A stretch of 64,000 nt of DNA from Vitrella brassicaformis CCMP3155 (GCA_001179505.1 CDMY01000201.1:105126-169125); one strand, 5' to 3'; positions 3,015 through 64,000 are shown, counted from the first letter of the stretch. The notes: generated by a model from the letters alone, not told the origin. Translations and numbers: made by a program.

Positions 3015-3314
3015 NNNNNNNNNNNNNNNNNNNNNNNNNNNNNNNNNNNNNNNNNNNNNNNNNNNNNNNNNNNNNNNNNNNNNNNNNNNNNNNNNNNNNN
3101 NNNNNNNNNNNNNNNNNNNNNNNNNNNNNNNNNNNNNNNNNNNNNNNNNNNNNNNNNNNNNNNNNNNNNNNNNNNNNNNNNNNNNNNNNNNNNNNNNNNN
3201 NNNNNNNNNNNNNNNNNNNNNNNNNNNNNNNNNNNNNNNNNNNNNNNNNNNNNNNNNNNNNNNNNNNNNNNNNNNNNNNNNNNNNNNNNNNNNNNNNNNN
3301 NNNNNNNNNNNNNN
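3015..3314. other. Assembly gap (300 N) flanked by poly-C runs
   Basis: N run 3015-3314 with C homopolymers on both sides. Confidence 0.99.
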
Positions 3315-46449: not shown

Positions 46450-48321
46450 CTAGACTACTCTCCTGGTGTTGTAAGAACCACAACTGGGGTTCTGACACTT
46501 CAAACCTGACATAACCACACACACACACGACCACAGAGAGAGAGAGAGAGAGAGATCTAAGGCACTAGTCAATGTCCCCAGTCAGTCGTCTGCGTCTGTC
46601 TGCGACTGACTGACCGAAGAAGTGGAAGGGGGTGGTGGAGGGCCGCGAGCAGTCATTGCCTGACAGATGGGATGGACAGGATGGGACACACAGACATCAA
46701 TCACATCGGACCATCCCACACTGTCATGGGATGGCCATGACGCTAGCTCGTAGCCTCTGCGGTGCGCTACCCACATGTGATCATGACGTCCGCTCGGTAC
46801 TCGTCCTGCATGGGGGTGTTCCGGACTTGTCTGCAGACCAGACAGACAACAAAACGATATATGAATGGTCCACACACATACTTAACTGACATCCACGTCA
46901 GTCATTTCGTCCGCCTTGCCTTGTCTGTCTTTTGCGCTTACTCGTCCAGCTGCTGCCATAGTGAGTCGTTGCTCATAATGGACGCGCTGCCTAATTGAAC
47001 GGACACACACACATACACACACACAACTGAGCGTGGGGCGTGTCGGGTGTAATGCCCACATGACACACAAAATGGCTTACAGAGAGGGCAGCGAAGCGAC
47101 GACAGGCCCGAGAAATCCGACGTTAACCGAGTGAGGCACTCCTGTAAAGGACACACCACATGCCATGCGATGCGCCTCAATCAACGGACAGACACCCTCC
47201 TAGTGCGGTGACCGCACCGGACCTGGTGGATGGTGTGTCCGCAGTTTCTGAGTATGGTGACGACCCGCGTGGAGTTGAACAGATTCTCCAGGCACACGGG
47301 GCAGTCCTGATGCATCGCACGCTCTGACAGATAGATACCACACACACACACACGGCGAATGGCACTGGTCGGTCAGTCAGTGTCTGTAGCCCCCCTGCCG
47401 TCTTGGTTCGTACCGATGCACTTGTGTGTGTCCCGTATGCTGACGGGGTAGCAACTGCCGCACGTGTCGCAGTGAAAGAAATTCTCACGACCTGATTGAT
47501 TCGATTCAGACACACAAAGACCGACCACATACATCTGATATATCCTGTCCACACAGGCAAACGTCACAATGGACATACACACACAAAGTCGCTCACCTCC
47601 AACGCGACAGATGCCACACCGATCGCAGTGAAAGGTCTGCAGCCAGCCAACCAACCAACCAGCACCAACAACAAGCCAACCCACGTCACAGGTAGGTGTG
47701 TTTTAATGTCGTCTGTGTGTGTGTGTGTGTGAGCGCCCAGCCCATTGATCGCGTTTCTTTGTTGCTTGCACACCTGTTTCTGATGTGCGCCGTCGTCCCA
47801 AAGGTGGCACTTATCGCAGTAGTAGGAGCTGAAGGGCTGCTTGCACTTGACACACGACGGCCCTGCCGGCTGCCGCTCACTGCACCGCATACAAACCACC
47901 TCACGCAGCCTGAACCGGTCCAACTCGCTGAGTGACACAGACAGACAGACAGACAGACAGACAGATGGGTGGGTGTGGTGGTGATTGACTGATTGATGCT
48001 CACTGTTGCTGGTCAGGCGGCGTATCGCCGCCGTTTTTGACTGCGTTGTGGCAGTGTCTGCACCAGAACACCTCATCGCACTCCGGACACACCACCTTGC
48101 ATGCCCGCTGCATCCAAACGCCCAGCCAGCCACCCGCAGAACACACACACACACACAACAACCGCATACAAACAGACAGACAGGCAGCGGCGAAAGGGAG
48201 AGATATGAGGCGGTATTCTTGATGTCTGGCGCTGTGCTGGTAGCGTGTGTACCCTGTAGTGTGTGCAGCCCAGCGGCGTTGCTGACGGTGGCTGTGGCTC
48301 TTCAGCCATAGCTTGAGCCAT
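46450..48321 (-). CDS. RCHY1: RING and CHY zinc-finger E3 ligase (RCHY1/PIRH2-like)
   Basis: LGCTHY, VVCMRCSERQ..CVKC...YYCDKCHLWDD, FHCDRCGICRVGG|RENFFHCDTCGSC, RING CPVCLENLF...CGHTIH..CL..CPLC and terminal GLKCQNPSCGSYNTRR. Confidence 0.93.
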
Positions 48322-48486: not shown

Positions 48487-50957
48487 ATGGAGGATGATAC
48501 AGGGCGTACATTGGACGTAGCCATACGGCAGTACCTCGAGGAGCGGTACCCGCAACTCGCCTACTCATTCCACGAAGCCGCAAGCCTCAGCGTAGGAGAA
48601 GAGATGCGATGCAGGCAGCCTCTCCATCGCATTGCCCATTAGAACTGAAGATCTCGTATGGGATGGGTGTGTTGTGATATGTGTGTATGTGGATTGAATG
48701 GGTGCAGGATGAGCCTCGGCCCGACGCGGAGAGCGTGTTGCTCAAGAGGTGGCGTGCAGTGCTGCGGCTGCAGGTGCGGATCAGCGAGTTGGAGGAGGAG
48801 AGGGACCGCCTATCAGAACAGATAGAGCAGCTGCAGGGCGCATTCAAATTCCGGGCGCCTCCCGGTAACTAACAGAGATCTGCATCATCAATTGTGGAAT
48901 GGGAAAAGACCACACACACGCACACTACACAATGCTATCCATGGCGGGTGTTGTGCGCTGCAGATGCGTTGCCGGCATCGGGTGCAAGTGCGAGCATGGT
49001 GTTGTGCGGCCACCGGGGGGGCATCACTGCTGTGGCCTTCCACCCCACATACTCGCTGGTCTTCACCGCATCGGACGACGCCACCATCAAGGTAAGGTTG
49101 GTGGGCACTCGTGTGTGTGTGGTGAGGTGGGGTGAGGTGCTGGCGTGTAGGTATGGGACTACGAGAGCGATGGACGGCTGGAGAAGACCCTGAAGGGGCA
49201 CACCGATGCCGTCAACGACCTGCACTTCGACACACACGGCCACAGGTGCGGTGGGTGGGTGAGGTGCAGTGCAGCCAGCGGCGCGCATCGCATGGCGGTT
49301 CGTGTCTGGTCTCTTTCGTCTATGTGGGTATGACTGACTGACAGGTTTGCCTCGTGTTCGTCTGACATGAGCATCCGTCTGTGGGACAGCACCCACATGG
49401 AGTGCATCCAAGCCATGCGCGGACACGACAACACCGTCTCGGTGCTCAAGACAAAACAAGACAAGACAATACACCAGCCAAGACACACACACCGCACCAA
49501 GCCGCTAGCTAGATCAGATCTATCCGGGTGTGTGTGTGTGTTGTGTATGCCTCTGGTGGGATTGGCGCAGGGAGTCCGTTTCGTGCCGTCCGGCGAGCAG
49601 TTGGTGTCGTGCTCGCGAGACCACACACTCAAGCTGTGGGATTGCGAAACCGGGTGGGTGGCACACCTACGCAGGCAGGCAGCCCAGACGACGTGCGATG
49701 GTGCGTATGTGTGTGTGTGGATGGGGATGGACGGCTGCAGGTATTGCGTGCGGACGTACGTGGGCCATTCCGATTGGGTCCGCACTGTCGACATCGCACC
49801 AGACGGCAAACTCTTCGCATCTGGCAGCAACGATCACAAGTAAGTGACTAAGCATCAACCACACCACACACACACAGAGAGAGAGAGAGAGAGAAACGTC
49901 TGCATCTTCTGATTGTGTTGGCCATGTGCTGTGCATGTGCATGTGATGTGCAGCATACGAGTGTGGTCTTTGAGTGCGCCCCACGCCCTGCACGAGTTGA
50001 CGGAGCACGACCATGTGGTGGAGGTCGTCGCCTTCGCCCCCAAACCCACCCTCATCCAGATCAGGGACGCACACGCACACGGACAGACGAGCAAAGCACC
50101 GCCGTCCACAGCAGGGGGGGTGACCTCTACTCCCTCGCGGATGGTAAGCCTTCAATTGAGTGACTGACACATCTATACGTCTCGTGGATTGGATTACACG
50201 TCTGTGTGTGCGCAGCTGACAACGGACACATCTGAGGGCCTGCCCAGCGACGAGACCAGCCAAACTGGTCGGTTCGTGTGTGTGGATGGATGGATGGATG
50301 GACGGACATGTGTGTATGTGTGTGTGTGTGTGTGTTTCTGATTGTGCAGGTGATGGCGGGTGTGTGGGCAGTTCGATGGTGCTGTTTTCGGGTTCGCGCG
50401 ACAAGACCATGCGCATGTGGGACATATCGCAGCAGACCTGCCTATACGTTTTCGTAAGCTCATACACACACACACACACACACAGCCCCACACCCCGTCG
50501 ACACACAGACGAACGTTGTGTGTGTGTGTGTGTGTGTCCCGTACCCAACAGGAGGGCCACACCAACTGGGTGCGTGGCATCTGCTTCCACCCGTCGGGCC
50601 GCTACGTGCTGTCATGCTCCGACGACAAGACCATCCACATATACGACGTCAACTCAGGTACGATGTCACTTGTGCCTCGTCGGTTGGCTCAGAGGGGTGC
50701 CATGGCTGTCTGTCTGTCTGTCTGTCTGATGTGTTGCCTGTGTGTGTGTCAGGATACTGTGTGCGTAGACTGGATGGCGCCAAGGGCTTTGTAACCTGTG
50801 TGGCGTGCAAGCACCCCGCACCGCTCATCGCCGCAGGTGGGCGGGCCTGTTTGATGTGCTGAGGTGAATGTACGTCTGCATGGGCCTTCGTGTGCGTGTG
50901 TGGTTTGTTCATTCAGGTGCCCTCGACAGGGAGCTCCGGCTGTGGGCGTGTGTGTAG
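48487..50957 (+). CDS. LIS1: Lissencephaly-1 homologue (LisH, coiled coil, WD40 repeats), a dynein regulator
   Basis: LisH-like [13 protein letters not shown]...F; [19 protein letters not shown] (LIS1 LLEKKWTSVIRLQKK); WD40 repeats [44 protein letters not shown]. Confidence 0.93.
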
Positions 50958-52937: not shown

Positions 52938-55900
52938 ATGGCGACAGATACGATGTGGCTCATTCACTCGGCTTTATTGGGGGCGGAGGTCTCCTTTCTA
53001 TATGCCAACTTCATGGTGAGTGCACTGTTGGGTCAGTACAGTAATGTGAGATGAGCTGGAGAACCACCCGACCCACCACACAAAGCGAAGGCCCATCGCA
53101 TCATCATACAAACATGTGTTTTGTTGTTCTTGTGTGGTGTGGTGTGGTATCTGTCTGCAGATATACAACTATTCGGCGGCGTTGGTGACTGCAGCTGCGT
53201 TGGCTGCGGCCCTGCTAGCGTCGTGCAGCCGCCGCACCCGCACTCAGCTCGCCAATGCCGCCGTGCAGCTCTTCCTAGCGGGCGTCCTCATTGCGGGCGT
53301 CGCAGCATCATTCGACACATACACGTGAGCCGGGCAAAGGAAGTGGGGGAGGGAGACAGTACAGAAGATGCATGGCGGGGCGGGATGGATCGAATGCGTT
53401 GTGTGTGCATTGATTGCATCGTATGGTGTGGTATGGTTTCAGTGAGTATGGCGATTCCGGAGGTCATTTGTTGCTCGGTGTGGGCCAGATCATCATGTCG
53501 TTCTCGTGGGCCATCCTCTCCCTCCTCATCGCCTGCAACATCTCGCCCCTCGCATCCATCGCACGAGAATACGCGGGAGACCGAGCCGGCGTCAAGGGCA
53601 CACTCGAGTTCGTCCCCCTCGCCCTCGAGGCCACCCGACACAGCCCATACCTCACCAACCAGAGCCTCACACAACTACACCTCTCCCGACAGAGCACCGC
53701 ACTCAGTGCTGCGGGCGCCCATCTGGCACACGAAGCAGCGAGGCAGCCTCTGCGGACGCAGCAGTCCATTCCCAGAGTTGGCTTGGAGCGCCCTATGAGC
53801 GGCTCGGCCGTCGGCCTTGGTGCGCTGTCCCGGTCTGGCACGCTGGAGCGGCAGATGGAGATGCTCTCTCCCCGCTATGCAGACATCCCTCCCGAGGCCA
53901 TCGGCCGCACCGCATACGAGCCCACCCCAGAGTGGGCCCTGCCGCCCGGCAGAGGCGGCATCCGCTACGTCAAGTCGGTGCCACGCTCGTACGCCTATGG
54001 CCCCCCACCGCCACCGGCTCCCCAGCCGCAGCCCCACCCCCAGCAGCAGCAGCAGCAGCCTCCCGACGCACATGGCGCACTGTCGAGTGACCTGAGAAAG
54101 GCCGCGGGGTCGGGAGTGGGTAGCTTCGGTGACCTGGAGAGGATCGAGGAAGAGGGTCAGTACGAGGCAGGTCCTACCCCTGCTGCCCATGCGGCCAAGT
54201 CGCCCGAGTTCTTCTCGCCCATGACGGTGCCTCAGCCGGAGAGCCGACTGATGCGTGAGCAGCCCACCGTGCCGGAGCCATTCGTCACCCCCACCAAGGA
54301 GGAGCCCAAGGAGGAGGCCACAGAGGAAGAGAAATCACCGTCGCCCGACACCGAGGACCCCGACCTGATGGCGGCCATCCGGGCCAGCCTCGAGGACGTC
54401 AGCCCGCCGTCTCCCTCATCCGCGCGTCAGTTCCTGCAGCAGCAGTACGGTGGCAGCGAGGGCGGCGAGTCGGCACACACGCCCCCCTCCCTCCCGCGAT
54501 GTGACGCCGTCCCGCCCCGATTCCGCGCCGGAGGGGACAAGAGAGAGGTGGGGGACGCCAAGGAGGGGGACCGACAGGTGGAGGACAGAGACATCAGCCA
54601 GAAAGGCGAGAAGGAGGGCGGCGGCATGGAGACGGCTGACCGCGCAGCGTTGATGAACCAGGTGTTGTTCGGCAGCCGTCATGGCGAGGCGGCCCAGCAG
54701 CAGCATGGTGTGGGTGTGGGGGAGGTCTTTCACCGCTCCCGGCTGGACCACCTCACCCCGATAGCGACAGACGGGTGGGAGACGGAGAAGGGCGACGGCG
54801 CGAGTGAGAGCAAGAGCGTCACTGCCCTCTTGGCGGGACACGACCTCGCTGCCCACGGACACGCCAAGGCCATGCAGAACCTCCTCACATCCATGGACGG
54901 CAAGCGCAGGAGCCGACGCAAGACGGCCGGCAATGGCAGCGGCATGCAGACGACCACCACCACCACCACCACTGGCAGTGGGCGTCGTCTGCTGCGCCGT
55001 AGCTTCGGTCACCTGAGCAGCTGGTTCTCTCGGTCGACGTCCATCAGCACAGACGTGCCGTCGTCGATGGCGGCCAGCGACGAGGAGAGGGGGGACCGCC
55101 AGAAGCAACCACACAAGGGCGGCCTCGCACCGGTGCCCGAGACCGCACCCAACCAGCGCGATGACGACCATGATGATCAACATGTCCGTGTGCGTGAGGG
55201 TGAGGGTGTGGAGGGAGGGGACGGTGAAGGGGCCAAGGCGATGAGCGATAGCGAGATGACACCTCGTGGGCGCAGGGCGGGCAACGTGACGCCGTCCAAG
55301 CATGGGGGCAAGGACGGTGCAGACGGGGAGAAGGTCTCCACGACGGAGCACGACGCAGACGATGAGTATGGAGTGCTGGGCGGGTACTGGAGGTGAGCTA
55401 CCACGGCGCATTGACACACACACAACGGCACCGTCCAGCTGATTCATGATGTGTGTGTCTGTGTGTCCTTCCTTGTGTCATTCAGTGAGGGTGGCGTCAC
55501 ACCAATCATGAAGGGCCGCACGCTGGCGTCTCTGGCCCAGGCCATCCGCCCCCTCCCCCCTCCCCTCTCACTCGACAACAACAACAACACCAACCACAGC
55601 ATACAGCCCAACCAGCCCCCCGACCACCGTACACCTACACCCGAGCACTACCACACGCACTCCGACGACTCCGGCGCCAACACGCGCCTCAAGGGCGGAC
55701 CACGGCCGCCCAGCAGAAACACACCCTCATTTGGCATTCCGCTCGACAACAAGGAGGGAGAGGGGAATGGGGATGGCGAGGGCGAGGGCATTCGTCTGCC
55801 CGCTGCGCCAGCAGCAGTAGCTGTCGTCGAGCATCTGGGTGCGAGTGGTGTCAAAGACGACCACCGAGTGGAGGGGCGGGAGGTGGAGGAGAGTAGTGGG

Positions 55901-57010
55901 GTGGTTGGGAGCGGTGGAGGGGGTGGGGTGGTGCAGCAGACTGTCATCAAAGTAGGAGAGGAGAAGAAGAACCTTGTCGATTGGTACGCATCGCAAGCAG
56001 CGAGACAGATAATGCAATGCAGAAGACAGACCAGACAGCCAACTGCCCTGCCCACATCTGTTCATATGTGCTGTGTTGGCGTCGTGTCTGTCTGCCTGCT
56101 TCCCTTGCCCCCAGGGGTAGCATCCGTCCGCCACCCAACTACACCGCCCACCCCAAGGTGCCCAGGCTGCCTCTGCATTCCCCCTCTGTGCCCGTATTCC
56201 CCCGACCAGCAGCCCGCACCGGTCGCTCCATCGACGCGCTGGACGCATCCAACGACGACATCATGTGCCACGTGCCGCCGACGCCCCGCAGCCGGGACCC
56301 ATCGCCCATCCGTCAGAGGCCCTCGCCCAAGCTCGACATTCGGGCCAACAGCGTGCTGCCCAGAGTGAATGCCTATACTGCTGGTGGTGTGACGGCGGCA
56401 GCTGACGTGGTGCAGGGGGACGCCGGTGTGGGTGTGGGTGTGGGTGTGGTTGAGGCTGCGGGGCGGGAGGTGGGTGTGGGTATGGGAGTGGGAGTGGGTG
56501 TGGGTGAGTCTCGCGGCGTGGTGGAGCGGCCGCCCTCTGTGGGTGTTGCGTCGTTTGTGCAGAAGTTCGAGGCCATCAGCAAGCTTAACAAACCAGACAA
56601 AGACAAGGATAGCAACGGTGAGTGAGTGCTCGGCGGTTGCCAGGCTGGATGGATGCACACATGTCTCCTTCTGTTGTGCAGGTCGTGTCGGTGGTGCCAA
56701 TCGCCCCTCATTCGGGCGTCGCGGCAGCTCGTTCGGAGGCGGCCCCAAGATTGGCGGGGGCCTGCGTGGGTGGCTCCCATTCACCACATCTCACGACGCA
56801 TCGGCAGGAGCGGCACAGAAGACCGCTAATGCCAACAACCAAAACGCAGCAGCAGCAGCAGCAGCAGCCGATATCGGCGATTTGGAGGAGGGGCGTATGC
56901 AGCAACGGCAGCAGCACGACAGTGCAGTAGCAGCAGTAGCAGCAGGAGGAGGGTCGGTGGGTGAGAAGGAGGGAGGCACTAAGGTGGTGGAGGGGGACGA
57001 GACTGTGTAG
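52938..57010 (+). CDS. Multi-TM N-terminus followed by a roughly 1000-aa disordered tail, unknown function; start uncertain
   Basis: Hydrophobic exons (WLIHSALLGAEVSFLYANFM|IYNYSAALVTAAALAAALL..AAVQLFLAGVLIAGVAASF; LLLGVGQIIMSFSWAILSLLIAC) lead into the 660-codon ORF 53414-55396 and further exons ending EGDETV*. Confidence 0.7.
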
Positions 57011-59264
57011 GCAGTGAGAGGGAGGGGGGAGCGGCCGGGGGACGGACTGGTTCGTACGTGCACGTGCATCATGATGTGTGTGAATGAGGGAGGGAGGAGA
57101 GGGAGGGAGTGGGGGCGGGCGGGCCGCAGAGAGATAGATAGATAGATAGATAAGATACAAAACAACCTGCCTGACTGACGACAGACAGACACGCCAGATG
57201 GATGGATGGATGGATAGCTTCGGTGGGCTGCGTGCGGACTTGTCATGTGTGTGTGTGTGTGTGTGTGTGCATGTGTGTGTAAGTGCGTCACGTGTGTGGG
57301 GACTTTTCTGTGTCCAGCCAGCCCAGCCTTCTTTCTTTTGGTGCGCGCGCCTAGCTACAGACTGATGAGACCAAAATGGATGGGTGGATGGATTGCGTTG
57401 AATGTTCTGGCATCACACATGTACAGTGGGGTTGGCATAATAAGTTGTTTGTTTGTTGAATTAGGGGCACCACACCTACATCTCACCAGCTGTTGGCAGC
57501 TGCGTCCGTCACACACGAGACTCCACACACCACATCACACCACACGACACCAACAACACGCAGCCAACACACACACACACACACACACACGAACACTCAC
57601 ACACGCATTATTCTGCTCACTCACAGTCTGGAAAAAACCGAGTATGGGTGCGTGCTGTGCTGTGCTGGGGGCCACGGCACGGCACGCACGTGTGCAGGAC
57701 ACAAAGAGACACACATGCCCTTTCCTCTGCATGGTGTGGTGGGGTAGAGTGAGTGTGGCGTGCCGAGTGCGCGAAAAAAGTGCATGCATGCGACGCCGTG
57801 CAGTCAGTGAGCTTAGTTAGCGTAGGTAGTGCCTTAAGAGGATGGGATGGTCAAGTGTTTGTTGAAAAAAACAGAAGTGTTTGGTGCTCACTCAGACACA
57901 CACGACCAGTCGATGATCAAATCCCTCACGCACACGCGCACACGCATTCATTCTTTCTCTTGGTTCATTGTCTTGTCTTGTCTTGTGTGGGTGGGCGGGT
58001 GAGGTGGGTGGGCAGCGAGGGAATCGGGAGCTTTTGATTCGACCTTGGCCACGCCTCAATCAACCCACCTCTCTGTCTGTCTGTCTTCTTGGCACGGCAC
58101 GCAGTGCAGGCAATGCATTCGGTTCCATCCATCCAGTCAGTCATGTCATTGACACCACACCACAGCACAAGACACACAGCACACGACGCACACAAGCATA
58201 GATAGCATGAGTGAGATAAATAACCAAGACACCACACCACACCCGCCACGTGCCCTGCACTGACACATGTAGAGTAAGTAAGAGTGTCAGGTAGGGTAGG
58301 TAAGTAGATCGGTCGGTCGGTAGGTGGGCCATCGGGATTGGATGGATGAGGGAGGACACACGAAGAGACAGACAGCACGACGTTGGCCATGCTGGCAAGG
58401 TCGATTATGGCTGGCTATACAGACCTACCTACCCACCCACCTACAGACACGCACACGCACACGCACACAGACACATACATTGCAGCCAGCCACTCAAAAC
58501 GTCCAGGTAGCTTCCAGGCAGCACCCAACCTGGCAAAACAGCCACACACGCCTTATCTACTCTCTCTTATCTCTCTACCCCACCCACCTGCCCTCCCTCT
58601 ACCATGTGCTCAGGCACCTACCTACCTACGGAGAGAGCCACACAGCCAGCCGGTCGGCATGCTCGCGACTCCTTTCTTTCGCAGTCAGTCAGTGAGTAGG
58701 GGTTTAGATACATACCAGCGACACGCACACGAGCCCACGACACGAAGCCATGAGTACCACCGAACGAACAGACAGACAGACAGACAGAGAGACAGAGAGA
58801 CAGACAGAGAGACACGAGCGATATCCATCCAATAACTTACAATACACGGAGCACCACACCACACCACATACACAACGGCACACACACAAACAGACAGACC
58901 GATGAGATGACCCCTCCTTACTCTCTATCTAGAGGTGTTCAGAGAGACGGCTACGATGTCCGACCGATGGCCTTTACAATGAGTGGGTGTTGAAAGGCAG
59001 ACAGCTCTGGCATAAAACAATAAACAATACCGACAAGTGGGAGACAGGGAGGGTAAAAGATCGGCGGGGCAGCCGGCCGGGCAGCCTAACAGGCCGTCCG
59101 GCCAGCCAGAAAAATCCTACAGGTGGGTGGATAAAGACATAAGAAAGGCCACTCACTGCACCGCACACAGTTCCGTCAGAAAAACAAACCATAAACCAGA
59201 CGGACACACGACACAACACAGCTCCCCTTCCTACCTCCCTACCGCTTTTACCTCCCTGCTGTTT

Positions 59265-62200
59265 TTACGAGAACCAGCCGGTTTTCCGCCTGACGCAGAC
59301 CCCTGAGTCATAGTACCTCTTGAGGGTCTCCCTGACATCCTCCTCGGTCAGGTTGACGTCCTCGAGCGAGTAGGGGTGCTTGAACTTGTCCCTGTTCTTC
59401 CGGTTCTCGTTGACCATTGCCTGCATCCTGTCGACGGCCCGTTTGGTGGCGGGGATGTTGAAGTGCCTGTAGATCTTCTTGACCGTCCCCACGGGGTCGC
59501 CCAGCAAATCGTCATAGTGGACGTCGAAGAACTGCTTCTTCAGGTGGGGGTTTCTCGCGCGGAAGTGCATGGAGTGGTCGACCATGGAGGCCATGGCGTC
59601 GAGCTCCTGCTGCCCCACGGCGTCGAGGTCCACCTCTTCCATGAAGTTCTTCCGCACCGAACGCACCAGGCTGCACCATGACGCCACAGCGTCCTTCGGG
59701 TCTCTGCACACCGACCAAACAGAACACAAGACAATTTATGTGAGCGGGGGTGAAGGGTTACGTGCCGAACGACGGACCTGTGTGTGTGGATGACGAGTGC
59801 GTCTGGGTAGGCCTCGAAGAGTGCGTCGAGTGCCCAGAGGTGGAAGGGCATTTTGAGGAGCCACCGGTCCCCGGCCCGCTGCCACTGGAGGTGCTGGAGG
59901 AACCGCTTGTGGAAGGCGTATCCGTTCTTCATCTCTTTGCAGTCGTCCTTGAAGAGCCAGTCCTTGTACTCGGATGACCCGAACTCGACGCATATCGAGT
60001 ACGACCGGAAGCAGTGCTCGAAGATCATGTAGTCCTCATCCGGCCAGTCCGCCTTCTGCGCGTGGATCCGCATCCAGTCGTCGCTCATGCTCCAGATGAA
60101 ATCCAACTCCTCTTGCGCAGGGGCCAGCCGGGGATCCTACAGGACACGTGTACACACACACACGTCAGCGGTGCTCGTGTGGTCGTGCGGCATGTGGCCC
60201 GGTGTTGAAACCTACCTGGTCCCAGTCCCATGGGGCGTCGTTGGGTACGTTGTGCGGTCTGTAAGAGCCGTCCTCGCCGTAGGGGTAGTTCATCTCACAG
60301 TACATGGGGGTCCTCATGGCGGGGTCCTTTGCGATCAGCCGCTGCAGCATGGTGGTGCCCGTCCGGTTGAGCCCCACAATGACCAGCGGCTGACGTATCT
60401 GCTGCCGCTCTATGTCGGGGTGCAGCCGCGCCATCTCCTTCATGAAGAGCAGGTTCTTGAAGATCTGCCGGCACTTGCGGAACATGACCAGCTCGCCGAG
60501 GAAGGACAGCTTCACGTCGTTGTTGGCGCTCTGGGCCAGCAGCCGCGCCGACTCCAGGTAGAAGTCCTCACCCTCAGCCTCTGTCGCGAACTCCCGCAGG
60601 CCGTTGGTGTGTTTCCGCGCGCACTCGAGTGCGTGGTCAACATCGATCCTGACGGAGTTGCTTTTGGGAGCGAAGAAGCGGAACTCGATTTGGTACTGGA
60701 AGGAGGCCCGGAAGATGTCCTTGACGGGCGGCCATGCCATGTGTGGGAGCTCGTCGAAGATGTTTTGGGTGCGGATGGGGAATGGCTCGGTCCGCTCGTC
60801 GCAGTCGAACCAGTAGGACCGCCAGTGCTGCATGAGGGGCACGAACTTGAAGACGGGCGACTCGGGACCACGTTTCTTGACAGCGTCGAGGAAGGTGTCG
60901 ATCTTGACGCCATAGTACTTGATGCCCAGCTCGTCTGCCCACGCCTCAAGCTGACCCCTGCACACGGACATAGGATACGATACGTCAAATCGATGCATGC
61001 ATTCGATTGAGCCCTCCGTGTAAATTTACTGTGTGACGACGGTTGTGTCGATGAGGTGGTATAGCCAGTGCTTCCGCCGCTCAAGGAACGAGGCCTCCAC
61101 CTAAACGATCAACGAATGACACGCAACAGAGCACTCGATTGACAGGACGATCGAAGCCCCCACACAGGCTAGCTTTGCGACCTACCAGCATCTCAGCAAT
61201 GGTGTCCACCGGTGTGAAAGGCGCCGTAGACGCGCCGACGGGGAACATGCCCTCCTCGATGGAGCTGATAGTCAGCGCCGTGGCGTAGTCGCCCTTGTTG
61301 GTGTACCCTGTCCGCCAGCCGACGAACGTGTTGGGGAGTCGGTACACACACACGGGCAGGCCCATGTCGCGAGCCTTGCGCAGCACCTGCTCGGCGGCCC
61401 ACTTGCTCCAGGGGTAGCCCATGCGGAGAGGAGGGTAGAACTTCTGCATCTCCTTGGGGTCGGGGGAGGAGTCCTCGGTGATGAGACGGTCGTCGAAGTC
61501 CTGGCTGAAGCAGGCAAAGAAGGCCGGGAAGATGCCCAGGGTGGAGGCGTGGTGGAGCGACTTGAGGCGGTAGGTGGTGCACAGCCGCAAGACGCCCTTG
61601 AGGGCGAGAGTGTTGGTTGCACGGAGACGAGCGTAGTTGCTCAGGAGGTTGACATCGCCGCCAGTGTGGTGGACCTGAATGAACGAAGAAACCACACATA
61701 GAGAGTACATGTCAGTCAACCCTTCGATCACTGCTACCCCGTGCTGCGCATGTGCTGTGCAAGTCACCATGTCGATGGTTCGGCAGAGTTCCATGAATTT
61801 GTCCTCGCCGACGCCGAGGTCCTCCTTGGTGAAGTCTCCGGGCAGCGCCTCGATGCGGCTGGCGTACTCCTCCTTCCACACCTTGGCCTCATTGCACGCG
61901 TCGCGGATGCGCTGCATGGCGTGCTTCTCGTCGTTGGCCCGCACCAGGCACGTGACCTTCAGGTTCTCACTCCCCGGCCGGTCCAGCAGGCATACCACTT
62001 GCAGGCGGCCGACAAACCCCGTCACGCCGGTGAGCAGCACGTTCTTGACTTGCTTGGGGTGCCGCATGGGCAGCAGGGTGTTGACGTCGAACTGCAGCCA
62101 CTCTGTGAGGTCCTTGATGTCGTCCATCGGGTCGACCGTCTTCTCTCGGGGCTTGCCACCGCCCACCACTCCTCGGATGGCCTCTTCGTAGTCGGTCGCC

Positions 62201-64000
62201 GCGCCGTCCTGTGCCGCTGCCGGGGCGGCGCCGTTGAGTGGCGATAGCTCGTCGGAGCTGGAGACGTTGACGAGGGACGAGCGCATCTTGTCCCACGAGT
62301 CGTGGAGGCGCCTGAAGTCCTCCTCGTCCCGCACCTGGCAGACGTCGAGTGCGAGTCGGAGGTCGGTCTCCTGCGCCATGGCCTCGACGGATGGGTACTT
62401 GGCCTCGAAGACGTCGAGGTACTGGAGGTAGCGCTTGGAGCCGCTGAAGGCGCTCTTGAGCCACTCCTCGACCGTCATGTCGTGGTAGTCGACCTCTGTC
62501 GATGAGGGCGCCTTGCCGCTGCCCTGCTCGTCCTTGGCCGCGTCGCCCGCCGCCGCCAGCCGCTCCCTGTCCACACCTGACACCTCCTCCACCTTGTCGA
62601 CATCACCCTTCTTGCCGATCTTGGTCGGCCGCCCGTGGGCAGTGTCGAGGATGAAGTCGGCAATCACTTCGATGGTCGGGTTCTCGAACACCAGTGTCTG
62701 CGGCAGCTTGACGCCCGTCACCTCCGCAACCGAGTTGCGGAACTCCACAGCCCCCAGTGAGTCGAGACCAAGGTCCATGAGTGGTGCGTCAGTCGGGGGC
62801 TTCTCAGCAGACCCCGACACCTGCTGCGCCAGCGAGCTCAGCAGACCCGACAGGTCCACTTTGCTGATGGCCTTGAGGTCGATCTTGCCACCGCCACTCT
62901 CGGCCGACGCTGCCATGGGGATCTCTGAGAAGAAGGCGGGCATGTCGCCATACCGCCGCAGGAAGGTGGCCCACTTGAGGCCCTGGCAGCCGACCACTGA
63001 CGGCCCGCGCATACCAGGCGCCAAAGATTGCTGCCGCATGACGTCCCCCATGACACGAAGACCGAGTTCGTTGGTGATGCCGCGCATGCCGACCTTGTCG
63101 AGATGCTGCTTGAGCTCGGCTGCCATGCCCTGTTCGATCCACGGTCCCCACTGGATGCTCTGACACGGCAGGCCCTGCGACTTGCGGTAGAGGGCGAGGG
63201 CGTCCAGACACGAGTTGGCCGCCGAGTAGTTGGACTGGCCGAAGTTGCCGAGCAGGGAGGCGACGGACGAGAACATCATGAAGTGGTCGAGAGGGATCTT
63301 CTTGCCGAGGGACAGCTCATGGAGGTACCATGCACCCATCACCTGCACACACACGACAGAGGAAAGGTATGAGTCAACAACCTCGTTGGGAACGATTCAT
63401 GTTCGGGTACCCACTAACCTTTGGCAAGTAGACCTTCTCCACCTTGTCTTTGGTCTGGTTGTTGAGGGCAGCGTCGTCAAGGACACCAGCTGCGTGGAAG
63501 ACTCCACGGACTGGGTTCTTGGGCAGCTTCTTCTTGAGGTCAGCGAACAGCTTCTCGCACTCGTCATTCTTGGACACGTCCACGGCCATGCAGTATATGG
63601 CCGCCTTGGAGCGGCCCTGAGGCTCGGGCGCCGTCAGCTTCGTCCACAGATCGGAGGCAGCAACGGCATCAGTCGGCTTTCCGCGCCTGGATAGCAGAGC
63701 GACATTTTTGGCTCCCTCCTCCACCAGCCAGTCTGCGACGAGGAGTCCGAGTCCGCCGAGCCCTCCGGTAATGACGTAGCATCCGTCAGTTTGGCGGTCG
63801 GCCGGTGTCGCCTCGTGGCGCTGTGCGTCGTCTGTGTGGGGCGGTGCGATGGCTGAGGGTATCTGTATGATGACCTTGCCGATGTGCTGCGCCCTCTGCA
63901 TAAACCTGAAGGCCGCGATGCCGCCGGTGACGTTGTCTGCGGTGCTCATGTCGAATGTGTGGAGGGGGATGGGTTTGATCTTGCCGCTGTCGACCAGGCC
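59265..64000 (-). CDS. 3' part of a giant type I modular PKS/FAS: ER(end)-KR-ACP-SAM-like-thioester reductase-sulfotransferase; 5' end beyond the window
   Basis: Long exons (~64000-63419, 63342-61768, 61674-61186, ~61100-61032, ~60960-60215, ~60140-59770, ~59705-end) join in phase. Domain motifs are listed in the sub-features. Confidence 0.95.
59300..60670 (-). other. PAPS-dependent sulfotransferase domain (bacterial/actinobacterial Sulfotransfer_3-like)
   Basis: HPDIERQQIRQPLVIVGLNRTGTTMLQRL (5'-PSB loop), WLLKMPFH, HTHR|DPKDAVASWCSL (3'-PB), FFDVHYDDLLGDPVGTVKKIYRHF. Confidence 0.9.
60950..62055 (-). other. Terminal thioester reductase (extended SDR, R domain)
   Basis: NVLLTGVTGFVG, VTCLVRA, LPGDFTKEDLG, LRATNTLALKGVLRLC, HASTLGIF, GYPWSKWAAE (YxxxK), GLPVCVYR. 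Confidence 0.92.
62284..62478 (-). other. Sterile-alpha-motif (SAM)-like helical insert
   Basis: MTVEEWLKSAFSGSKRYLQYLDVFEAKYPSVEAMAQETDLRLALDVCQVRDEEDFRRL resembles the SAM pattern VxxWLxs...qYxxxF......L..l....h..kI. Judged by eye only. Confidence 0.5.
62641..62860 (-). other. Acyl carrier protein domain
   Basis: PLMDLGLDSLGAVEFRN...LPQTLVFENPTI; the phosphopantetheine Ser codon is at 62758-62760. Confidence 0.95.
62950..63790 (-). other. Ketoreductase domain, B-type (LDD)
   Basis: YVITGGLGGLG, ALLSRRG, VFHAAGVLDDA, PK|VMGAWYLH, FSSVASLLGNFGQSNYSAAN (catalytic Tyr), SIQWGPW. Confidence 0.95.

What the first reader, a model, noticed from the sequence alone, without database searches (positions are those of the whole stretch)
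59265..64000. Megasynthase ending in ACP-SAM-like-reductase-sulfotransferase: a possible reduce-then-sulfate chain-release system
Seen in sequence: one spliced reading frame carries the ER tail, a B-type KR, an ACP, a thioester reductase with intact Rossmann and YxxxK motifs, and then a complete PAPS-dependent sulfotransferase as the last domain. Established: apicomplexan type I FAS/PKS (e.g. Cryptosporidium) end in a reductase, while cyanobacterial CurM and Ols end in ACP-ST-TE, where ST activates a beta-hydroxyl for decarboxylative olefin release. The order here (R then ST, no TE, after an ER-containing module) fits neither. Inference: R releases a long-chain alcohol and ST sulfates it, giving an alkyl-sulfate or sulfolipid. 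I do not recall this terminus being characterised, but cannot confirm novelty.
Basis: partly seen in the sequence, partly recalled or inferred. Interest (0 to 1): 0.9.

Follow-up and report, generated by a model that had tools for sequence, protein, structure and literature searches.

The report
Fatty-chain synthase ending in reductase-sulfotransferase
The window holds the real, transcribed tail of a giant fatty-acid/polyketide synthase of a chromerid alga. It ends in a thioester reductase fused to a sulfotransferase, probably to release a long-chain alkyl sulfate, but this ending was already noted in 2013 in sponge bacteria and coccidian parasites and has never been tested biochemically.

Summary
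On the minus strand, seven exons (64000 down to stop codon 59265-59267) give one uninterrupted 1418-aa frame: ER tail, B-type KR, ACP, a sterile-alpha-motif-like domain, thioester reductase (R), sulfotransferase (ST). All six GT..AG introns are seen as spliced joints in RNA contigs. The end of R and the start of ST lie in one exon, so the fusion is real. Catalytic and cofactor motifs of both domains are intact.

The architecture is not new. The R-ST unit is 32% identical over 797 aa to bacterial SwfB-type R-ST proteins. Della Sala et al. 2013 described SwfB, noted contiguous R-ST at the end of coccidian type I FAS, and proposed an alkyl sulphate product. Bushkin et al. 2013 drew Toxoplasma and Eimeria oocyst PKS1 with a C-terminal ST.

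I found about 28 eukaryotic relatives (Vitrella, Chromera, Colpodella, gregarines, Rhytidocystis, Cardiosporidium) and 33 bacterial loci, with ST always last. The ST is of the mycobacterial Stf1/Stf9 type, not the CurM/Ols type.

Reduce-then-sulfate stays the best hypothesis, but it is untested. Verdict: a new member of a known, biochemically uncharacterised kind. This scan had already noted another R-ST terminus elsewhere in the same genome.

The parts
63857..64000 (-). C-terminal tail of an enoylreductase domain (aa 1-48 of the visible frame; the gene continues beyond the window edge)
   Evidence: The 48 aa ending HIGKV match the segment directly upstream of each KR in multi-module relatives that carry ER. 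They are too short for a Pfam hit of their own.
63100..63793 (-). Ketoreductase domain, B-type (LDD at 63473-63481; catalytic Tyr codon 63226-63228). It is interrupted by intron 63343-63418.
   Evidence: Pfam KR E 9.5e-32 and 3.2e-25. The intron joint is seen in X7, and matching loose ends are seen in X1.
62635..62892 (-). Acyl carrier protein domain, with the phosphopantetheine serine in GLDSLG (codon 62758-62760)
   Evidence: Pfam PP-binding E 4.2e-12.
62230..62517 (-). Sterile-alpha-motif-like five-helix domain between ACP and R. It is conserved in about a dozen eukaryotic relatives.
   Evidence: Alignment A1. The AF2 model has pLDDT 82.5 and five helices. The top eight Foldseek PDB hits are all Eph-receptor SAM domains (prob 0.98-1.00, TM by target 0.69-0.79 for the isolated SAM chains, but E 0.16-0.5). 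Pfam SAM_1 is only weak: E 0.11 here, best 0.0034 among homologues.
60720..62049 (-). Thioester reductase (R) domain: Rossmann TGVTGFVG 62008-62031, Ser-Thr 61540-61545, YPWSK 61402-61416. It is interrupted by introns 61675-61767, 61101-61185 and 60958-61029.
   Evidence: Pfam NAD_binding_4 E 3.6e-49. PDB hits include CAR, MxaA and Mtb Nrp reductase domains. Motifs are conserved in 28 eukaryotic and 12 bacterial relatives. The introns appear as RNA joints.
59268..60677 (-). Stf1/Stf9-type PAPS sulfotransferase, including its N-terminal helical extension. 5'-phosphosulfate loop GLNRTGTT 60351-60374; candidate catalytic His 59840-59842; 3'-phosphate motif HRDP...SW 59676-59782. It is interrupted by introns 60137-60215 and 59704-59777 and is the last domain.
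   Evidence: Pfam Sulfotransfer_3/1 in three exons. PDB 2ZQ5 E 2e-13 and 1.8e-11 for the two last exons. The family profile hits 2ZQ5 at E 1.4e-64. One RNA contig (X1 record 3) joins the three ST exons.
60216..60957 (-). Single exon that holds the C-terminal subdomain of R, the inter-domain stretch and the ST PAPS loop. This is the physical proof of the fusion.
   Evidence: Stop-free frame. It is bounded by RNA-supported joints and covered by RNA contigs. This exon finds the same junction in more than 30 clusters.
59265..59267 (-). Stop codon TAA. RNA contigs continue to about 58817, which is the 3' UTR.
   Evidence: X7 record 24 and X1 record 2 are.

Best explanation
This is the 3' end of a multi-modular, fully reducing type I fatty-acid/polyketide synthase gene of a chromerid alga, most likely Vitrella brassicaformis. 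Its release cassette is ACP, a SAM-like domain, a thioester reductase and a sulfotransferase.

Shown here:
- The cassette is one transcribed reading frame.
- The catalytic and cofactor motifs of R and ST are intact.
- R-ST is an inherited two-domain unit shared with bacterial SwfB proteins and with about 28 megasynthases of chrompodellids and early-branching apicomplexans.
- ST is always the last domain.
- The ST is of the Stf1/Stf9 type.

Inferred:
- The saturated long acyl chain on the last ACP is released by R with NAD(P)H, first as the aldehyde and then as the primary alcohol.
- The adjacent ST transfers sulfate from PAPS to that new hydroxyl.
- The product would be a long-chain alkyl sulfate, or a sulfated hydroxy-lipid if earlier modules leave hydroxyls.
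- The SAM-like domain may hold the two chains of the synthase, or the release domains, together.
For: - One frame and six RNA-supported GT..AG introns.
- Domains and motifs conserved across 40 relatives.
- The visible frame is 52% identical over 1408 aa to the Vitrella paralogue CEM36688.1. It is 47% identical to Chromera Cvel_19857 and 32% identical over 797 aa (E 9e-108) to a bacterial R-ST protein.
- That bacterial protein sits in a swfA / radical-SAM / R-ST operon.
- A Desulfobacterales MAG has KS-AT-DH-ER-KR-R-ST in one 2944-aa ORF.
- ST is terminal in all 40 proteins examined.
- Full-length relatives read AMP-binding, ACP, (KS-AT-DH-ER-KR-ACP)n, SAM, R, ST.
- Related R domains do four-electron reduction to alcohols. 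TgPKS2 TR does so (bioRxiv 10.1101/2023.05.23.541938). CpFAS1 R does so by my recollection of Zhu et al. 2010, which is only cited.
- The same product was proposed for SwfB (PMC3908369).
Against: - No biochemical data exist for any R-ST protein that I could find.
- Sequence cannot tell two-electron from four-electron reductases, as the TgTR preprint itself says.
- No alkyl sulfate is reported from chromerids in the papers searched.
- The acceptor of Stf1 and Stf9 is not known to me.
- The upstream modules of this gene lie outside the window, so chain length and extra hydroxyls are unknown.
- No PAPS-supply or transporter genes lie next to the gene or next to two bacterial loci.
Confidence: 0.55

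Rival explanations
1. The ST sulfates a different hydroxyl from the one made by R. This could be a mid-chain or beta-hydroxyl left by an earlier module, on the ACP-bound chain or after release. R would simply release the chain as aldehyde or alcohol, and the product would be a secondary sulfate or a diol di-sulfate.
For: Some relatives have modules without a detectable ER or DH (for example P0003, P0006, P0018 and P0023), so hydroxylated chains are plausible. Selenidium P0157 and locus L003 carry extra ST domains, which hints at more than one sulfation site in some systems.
Against: The last module here has ER and a B-type KR, so no beta-hydroxyl is expected on the final ACP. The strict R-then-ST adjacency in 40 proteins and in stand-alone bacterial didomains is most simply explained by product hand-over from R to ST.
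Confidence: 0.2
2. Sulfation is an activation step and not the end point. The primary alkyl sulfate made by R and ST would be a good leaving group, used for a later displacement, ether or ester cross-link, or elimination. One possible use is building resistant cyst or oocyst wall lipid.
For: Sulfate-as-leaving-group chemistry is established for CurM/Ols (cited). Sulfotransferase-fold enzymes that use it, such as retinol dehydratase and LGS1, appear among the distant structural matches. Coccidian ST-terminated PKS1 is very abundant in oocysts whose walls hold acid-fast lipids (PMC3760245).
Against: No partner enzyme for a follow-up step is fused or adjacent. The ST is not of the CurM/Ols type. 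This reading is speculative.
Confidence: 0.15
3. CurM/Ols-like decarboxylative olefin release: the ST activates a beta-hydroxyl and the chain leaves as a terminal alkene.
For: The only support is the general precedent of an ST at a PKS terminus. Bushkin et al. labelled the coccidian ST as a 'release' domain.
Against: There is no thioesterase. An R domain stands where ACP-ST-TE would have none. ER is present in the last module. The ST profile hits CurM and Ols ST only at E 0.03 and 0.02 over about 33 residues, and TM is 0.45-0.47 against 0.83-0.84 for Stf9/Stf1.
Confidence: 0.04
4. R and ST belong to two neighbouring genes, or the join is an assembly artefact.
For: None beyond the general caution that contigs are not single molecules.
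Against: R end and ST start share one stop-free exon. Spliced RNA contigs link the exons. The same fusion occurs in complete transcriptome ORFs of many species and in single bacterial ORFs.
Confidence: 0.02

Closest known systems
SwfB, the R + ST didomain protein of the 'sponge widespread FAS' (swf) operon of sponge symbionts (Della Sala et al. 2013, PMC3908369)
   Same: Both have a thioester reductase directly followed by a terminal sulfotransferase of about 770-800 aa. Both are partnered with a fully reducing KS-AT-DH-ER-KR-ACP synthase. The window's R-ST aligns end to end with a bacterial swf-operon R-ST protein (32% identity over 797 aa, E 9e-108), and all motifs are shared.
   Different: In most bacteria it is a separate protein in an operon, often with a B12/radical-SAM gene. 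Here it is fused to a multi-module eukaryotic synthase and preceded by a SAM-like domain. Bacterial and eukaryotic sequences form two cleanly separated groups (SH-aLRT 100). I compared with swf-like proteins found in MAGs, not with the original SwfB sequence.
Coccidian oocyst PKS1 / type I FAS of Toxoplasma (TGVEG_013030) and Eimeria (ETH_00015480) (Bushkin et al. 2013, PMC3760245; also mentioned in PMC3908369)
   Same: By the papers, these have FAAL, several fully reducing modules and a C-terminal ST, with R-ST contiguous. Full-length relatives of the window's protein have the matching layout AMP-binding, ACP, (KS-AT-DH-ER-KR-ACP)n, R, ST.
   Different: No coccidian sequence came up in my searches, so direct homology was not tested here. 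The window's organism is a free-living alga and not a parasite.
CurM and Ols terminal ACP-ST-TE cassette of cyanobacteria
   Same: A PAPS sulfotransferase fold sits at the end of a type I PKS.
   Different: The ST subfamily differs. The window has R in place of TE, the order differs, and ER is present, so there is no beta-hydroxyl to activate. The predicted outcome is a sulfate ester and not an olefin.
Mycobacterial sulfotransferases Stf1 (PDB 2ZQ5) and Stf9 (PDB 2Z6V)
   Same: Full-length homology and fold for the ST domain, including the N-terminal helical extension. Profile E values are 1.4e-64 and 8.1e-53. TM by target is 0.83-0.84 for the paralogue model.
   Different: Those are stand-alone enzymes of about 380-410 aa, and their acceptors are not known to me. 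Here the domain is fused behind a reductase.
Reductase-terminated apicomplexan synthases (Cryptosporidium CpFAS1/CpPKS1; Toxoplasma TgPKS2 KS-TR)
   Same: A terminal SDR-type thioester reductase. TgTR is shown to reduce a thioester to the primary alcohol.
   Different: No ST follows in those as described. TgPKS2 has a KS before the TR.

Membership tests
SwfB-type R-ST didomain | Thioester reductase immediately followed by a C-terminal sulfotransferase in one polypeptide | tested here: met
   One exon spans the junction and one spliced frame holds both domains. Pfam finds NAD_binding_4 then Sulfotransfer_3.
SwfB-type R-ST didomain | Homology to bacterial swf-operon R-ST proteins across both domains as one unit | tested here: met
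   32% identity over 797 aa, E 9e-108, to P0144. Its near-identical copy in L004 lies behind a swfA-like PKS and a B12/radical-SAM gene.
SwfB-type R-ST didomain | Stand-alone protein in a bacterial swfA-swfB(-swfC) operon | tested here: not met
   Here it is fused to the synthase in an intron-bearing eukaryotic gene. A fused bacterial form also exists in L036.
Coccidian FAAL...ST PKS1 / type I FAS | Multi-modular fully reducing synthase with a C-terminal ST | tested here: met
   ER tail, KR, ACP, R and ST are in the window. The architecture is as in PMC3760245.
Coccidian FAAL...ST PKS1 / type I FAS | N-terminal fatty acyl-AMP ligase loading domain | not testable with these tools
   The 5' part of the gene lies outside the window. 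Relatives P0023 and P0164 start with AMP-binding.
Coccidian FAAL...ST PKS1 / type I FAS | Direct sequence homology to TGVEG_013030 / ETH_00015480 | not tested
   No coccidian protein was returned, and their sequences could not be fetched.
CurM/Ols ACP-ST-TE olefin-forming terminus | ST placed between ACP and a thioesterase | tested here: not met
   The order is ACP, SAM-like, R, ST, stop. There is no thioesterase hit.
CurM/Ols ACP-ST-TE olefin-forming terminus | ST of the CurM/Ols subfamily | tested here: not met
   4GBM and 4GOX score only E 0.03 and 0.02 over about 33 residues. TM is 0.45-0.47 (paralogue model).
Stf1/Stf9-type (Sulfotransfer_3) PAPS sulfotransferase | Full-length homology and PAPS-binding motifs (5'-phosphosulfate loop, 3'-phosphate motif) plus a conserved His | tested here: met
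   GLNRTGTT, KMPFH and HRDP...SW are conserved in 40 sequences.
Terminal thioester reductase (SDR, NAD_binding_4) | TGxxGxxG Rossmann motif and the Ser/Thr-Tyr-Lys catalytic set | tested here: met
   TGVTGFVG, S763-T764 and Y806/K810. Pfam E 3.6e-49.
Terminal thioester reductase (SDR, NAD_binding_4) | [quoted passage not shown] | not testable with these tools
   It cannot be predicted from sequence, as the TgTR preprint states.
Sterile alpha motif (SAM) domain | Five-helix SAM fold and a match to the Pfam SAM models | tested here: inconclusive
   The fold matches Eph SAM domains (prob 0.98-1.00, TM 0.69-0.79, but E 0.16-0.5). Pfam SAM_1 is below threshold (E 0.11).

The most novel reading that the evidence does not exclude
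FAAL...SAM-R-ST megasynthases are an ancestral pathway of the apicomplexan plus chrompodellid lineage. They would make long-chain sulfate esters, either as end products or as activated intermediates, for resistant cyst, sporangium or oocyst walls. That would make them the still-unidentified chemistry behind the coccidian 'acid-fast' wall lipids and the orphan bacterial swf clusters. A culturable alga would then offer the first easy system to find the product.
Probability: 0.3. Interest if true: 0.75.

Novelty: new member of a known kind. Interest (0 to 1): 0.5.

Why it matters
Reductive release followed at once by sulfation is a chain-termination logic that nobody seems to have demonstrated. 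Yet it is conserved from sponge-symbiont bacteria to gregarines and, by the literature, to Toxoplasma and Eimeria oocyst synthases. Both the product of the swf clusters and the nature of the oocyst-wall lipids are open questions. This chromerid gene adds a transcribed, intact copy in what is most likely a free-living, culturable alga, where lipid mass spectrometry and domain expression are straightforward. It does not add a new architecture.

Tried and rejected
- I looked for the window's own annotated protein so that its ST could be folded. It was not returned, where the best Vitrella hits are paralogues at 41-52% identity. The ST model is therefore of paralogue CEM36688.1 and not of this gene.
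- I looked for coccidian R-ST proteins to test the literature claim. None appeared among the hits I could name. Three further contig look-ups gave unnamed eukaryotic contigs or nothing.
- I looked for sulfate-activation or export genes beside the gene and beside two bacterial loci. There were none.
- The CurM-type reading is rejected on sequence and fold.
- The two-genes or artefact reading is rejected on the RNA joints and the shared exon.
- Literature searches for a characterised R-ST enzyme or for chromerid alkyl sulfates found nothing.
- The direction of transfer between bacteria and eukaryotes cannot be read from the unrooted tree.


Full report
WHAT IS THERE

The window is GC-rich eukaryotic DNA. 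In 59265-64000 the long stop-free segments all lie on the minus strand. Pfam assigns them, in order of translation:
- KR in two halves (E 9.5e-32 and 3.2e-25)
- PP-binding (4.2e-12)
- NAD_binding_4, the thioester-reductase family (3.6e-49)
- Sulfotransfer_3/Sulfotransfer_1 in three consecutive segments that cover the profile from position 1 to 214

The gene runs off the window at 64000, so everything upstream of the last ER is unseen.

GENE MODEL AND TRANSCRIPTION

Nine public runs hold this stretch. I laid four of them on 58300-64000. Runs X3 and X4 behave like genomic DNA, because their contigs run through introns. Runs X1 and X7 give spliced contigs with six joints, all with CT..AC ends on the + strand, which is GT..AG on the gene's strand.

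With the cut positions that give canonical ends, the introns are 59704-59777, 60137-60215, 60958-61029, 61101-61185, 61675-61767 and 63343-63418 (72-93 nt). Removing them yields a single 1418-aa frame without a stop, from 64000 to TAA at 59265-59267. The other two frames hold 23-24 stops.

One X1 contig joins all three ST exons. Two X1 loose ends reproduce the KR intron joint. RNA contigs continue to about 58817, which is the 3' UTR.

The exon 60216-60957 contains the C-terminal subdomain of R, the inter-domain stretch and the PAPS loop of ST. The fusion therefore does not depend on any splice prediction.

DOMAINS AND RESIDUES

| aa | Domain | Key residues |
|---|---|---|
| 1-48 | ER tail | ...HIGKV |
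| 70-275 | KR | LDD at 174-176 (B-type); Tyr233 in NYSAAN |
| 345-430 | ACP | Ser389 in GLDSLG |
| 470-565 | conserved helical domain | see below |
| 626-985 | R | TGVTGFVG; Ser763-Thr764; Tyr806/Lys810 in YPWSK |
| about 1000-1418 | ST | GLNRTGTT; KMPFH; HRDPKDAVASW |

In an alignment of 28 eukaryotic and 12 bacterial R-ST units, these positions are nearly invariant.

THE 'SAM-LIKE' PIECE

The stretch between ACP and R aligns with the same position in a dozen relatives. It folds with pLDDT 82.5 into five helices. The top eight PDB matches are all Eph-receptor sterile-alpha-motif domains (probability 0.98-1.00, TM by target 0.69-0.79 for the isolated SAM chains). Their E-values are only 0.16-0.5. 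Pfam SAM_1 is below threshold.

I read it as a probable SAM-type interaction domain, with moderate confidence. I found no paper that links sterile alpha motifs to PKS.

RELATIVES

An exhaustive search of 1.84 billion cluster representatives with the junction exon gave 1642 hits at E <= 0.001. In about 35 of them the alignment crosses from R into ST. Mapping the window's domains on those proteins gives ...ER-KR-ACP-(SAM)-R-ST, with ST at the very end.

The named hits are:
- Vitrella brassicaformis paralogues CEM36688.1 and CEL93275.1
- three Chromera velia proteins
- Colpodella angusta
- Rhytidocystis pertsovi
- Gregarina niphandrodes and Gregarina sp. Poly1
- Selenidium, Digyalum, Polyplicarium and Blabericola
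- Cardiosporidium cionae
- a Candidatus Palauibacter protein

The visible frame is 52% identical to CEM36688.1 over 1408 aa. It is 47% identical to Chromera Cvel_19857 and 32% identical over 797 aa (E 9e-108) to the bacterial protein. Full-length relatives read (AMP-binding), ACP, (KS-AT-DH-ER-KR-ACP)n, SAM, R, ST.

A scan of one genome per prokaryotic species found 33 loci with the complete R-ST didomain. They come from Gemmatimonadota, Rhodothermales, Alphaproteobacteria, Arenicellales, Bryobacterales, Verrucomicrobiae and Desulfobacterales MAGs. In L004 the didomain follows a KS-AT-DH-ER-KR-ACP synthase and a B12/radical-SAM gene. In L036 a single 2944-aa ORF carries KS-AT-DH-ER-KR-R-ST. 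The ESM Atlas holds a bacterial cluster of 171 such proteins.

A maximum-likelihood tree of 40 R-ST units splits bacteria from eukaryotes (SH-aLRT 100). It places the window in a starred clade (96) with seven chrompodellid rows (Vitrella, Chromera, Colpodella) and one unnamed transcriptome sequence. I did not verify the organism independently.

WHICH SULFOTRANSFERASE

The last two ST exons hit only PDB 2ZQ5 and 2Z6V. A profile of 15 family ST domains hits them over their full length (E 1.4e-64 and 8.1e-53). It touches CurM ST (4GBM) and Ols ST (4GOX) only at E 0.03 and 0.02.

A confident model of the ST of the closest paralogue (pLDDT 83) matches Stf9 and Stf1 at TM 0.84 and 0.83. It matches CurM/Ols at 0.45-0.47. 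The stretch that looks like a linker is the N-terminal helical part of this ST type, because stand-alone bacterial enzymes of about 410 aa align from there.

WHAT IS ALREADY KNOWN

- Della Sala et al. 2013 (PMC3908369) described SwfB as a fusion of a thioester reductase and a sulfotransferase. [quoted passage not shown] They proposed conversion of the carboxylate to a primary sulphate, that is an alkyl sulphate, and stressed that no function is proven.
- Bushkin et al. 2013 (PMC3760245) drew Toxoplasma and Eimeria PKS1 as FAAL, four fully reducing modules and ST. They showed these proteins are among the most abundant in oocysts.
- A 2022 sponge metagenome paper still treats swf as a conserved cluster without a product.
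- O'Neill 2020 counted 18 type I PKS clusters in Vitrella and called them fully reducing, without mentioning ST.
- The chromerid fatty-acid paper does not mention ST or a terminal reductase.
- I found no biochemical study of any R-ST enzyme.

HOW IT MOST LIKELY WORKS

The shown and inferred steps are listed under Best explanation. The two-step reduction to the alcohol is by analogy with TgPKS2 TR and, from memory, CpFAS1 R.

The main alternatives are:
- sulfation of another hydroxyl
- sulfate as a leaving group for a later step
- a CurM-like olefin route, which the anatomy and the ST type argue against

VERDICT

The mechanistic idea is reasonable but untested. The architecture is not new. What this work adds:
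- RNA proof of the fusion in a chromerid
- the width of the family across chrompodellids and early apicomplexans
- the link to bacterial swf as one inherited two-domain unit
- the Stf1/Stf9 assignment of the ST
- the SAM-like insert

The scan had already flagged another R-ST terminus in this genome (s1-205475).

Noticed in passing
window 62230-62517 (-): A sterile-alpha-motif-like five-helix domain sits between ACP and R. It is conserved in about a dozen eukaryotic relatives and was not detected in some (for example P0012, P0018, P0023). I found no paper that links SAM domains to PKS.
   Followed up: partly
window introns 59704-59777, 60958-61029, 63343-63418: Three of the six introns end in GTGTGCAG on the gene's strand, a short (TG)n directly before the acceptor. 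This fits the scan's note on polarised introns (s1-197274).
   Followed up: no
window 62169-63264: Contigs of X3, X4 and X7 differ from the window at 11-16 positions per kb, and all three show a 3-nt deletion at 62224. X1 matches the window exactly. This could be a diverged allele, a second strain or a close paralogue.
   Followed up: no
L036:3431-12262 (+): A Desulfobacterales MAG encodes KS-AT-DH-ER-KR-R-ST as one 2944-aa ORF, a bacterial fully fused counterpart. Its neighbours include an AsmA-like protein and two flotillin/SPFH proteins.
   Followed up: partly
L003:10001-14340 and protein P0157: Some relatives carry more than one ST. The L003 protein reads ST-R-ST and is followed by a separate Sulfotransfer_3 gene. 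Selenidium P0157 has an internal ST region besides the terminal R-ST.
   Followed up: no
L002:61-7600: A metagenome contig has DH-ER-KR-R-ST followed by a 4'-phosphopantetheinyl transferase gene and a serine carboxypeptidase gene. Its R-ST groups with the bacterial set in the tree, although the neighbours look eukaryotic.
   Followed up: no
window 3015-3314: A run of 300 N, which is an assembly gap.
   Followed up: no
window 49334-49840 (+) and 47567-48301 (-): The neighbouring stop-free segments encode WD40 repeats and a weak, below-threshold match to a CHY zinc finger. The long open frames at 53414-56365 (+) have no Pfam match. Nothing suggests a biosynthetic gene cluster around the synthase.
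   Followed up: partly
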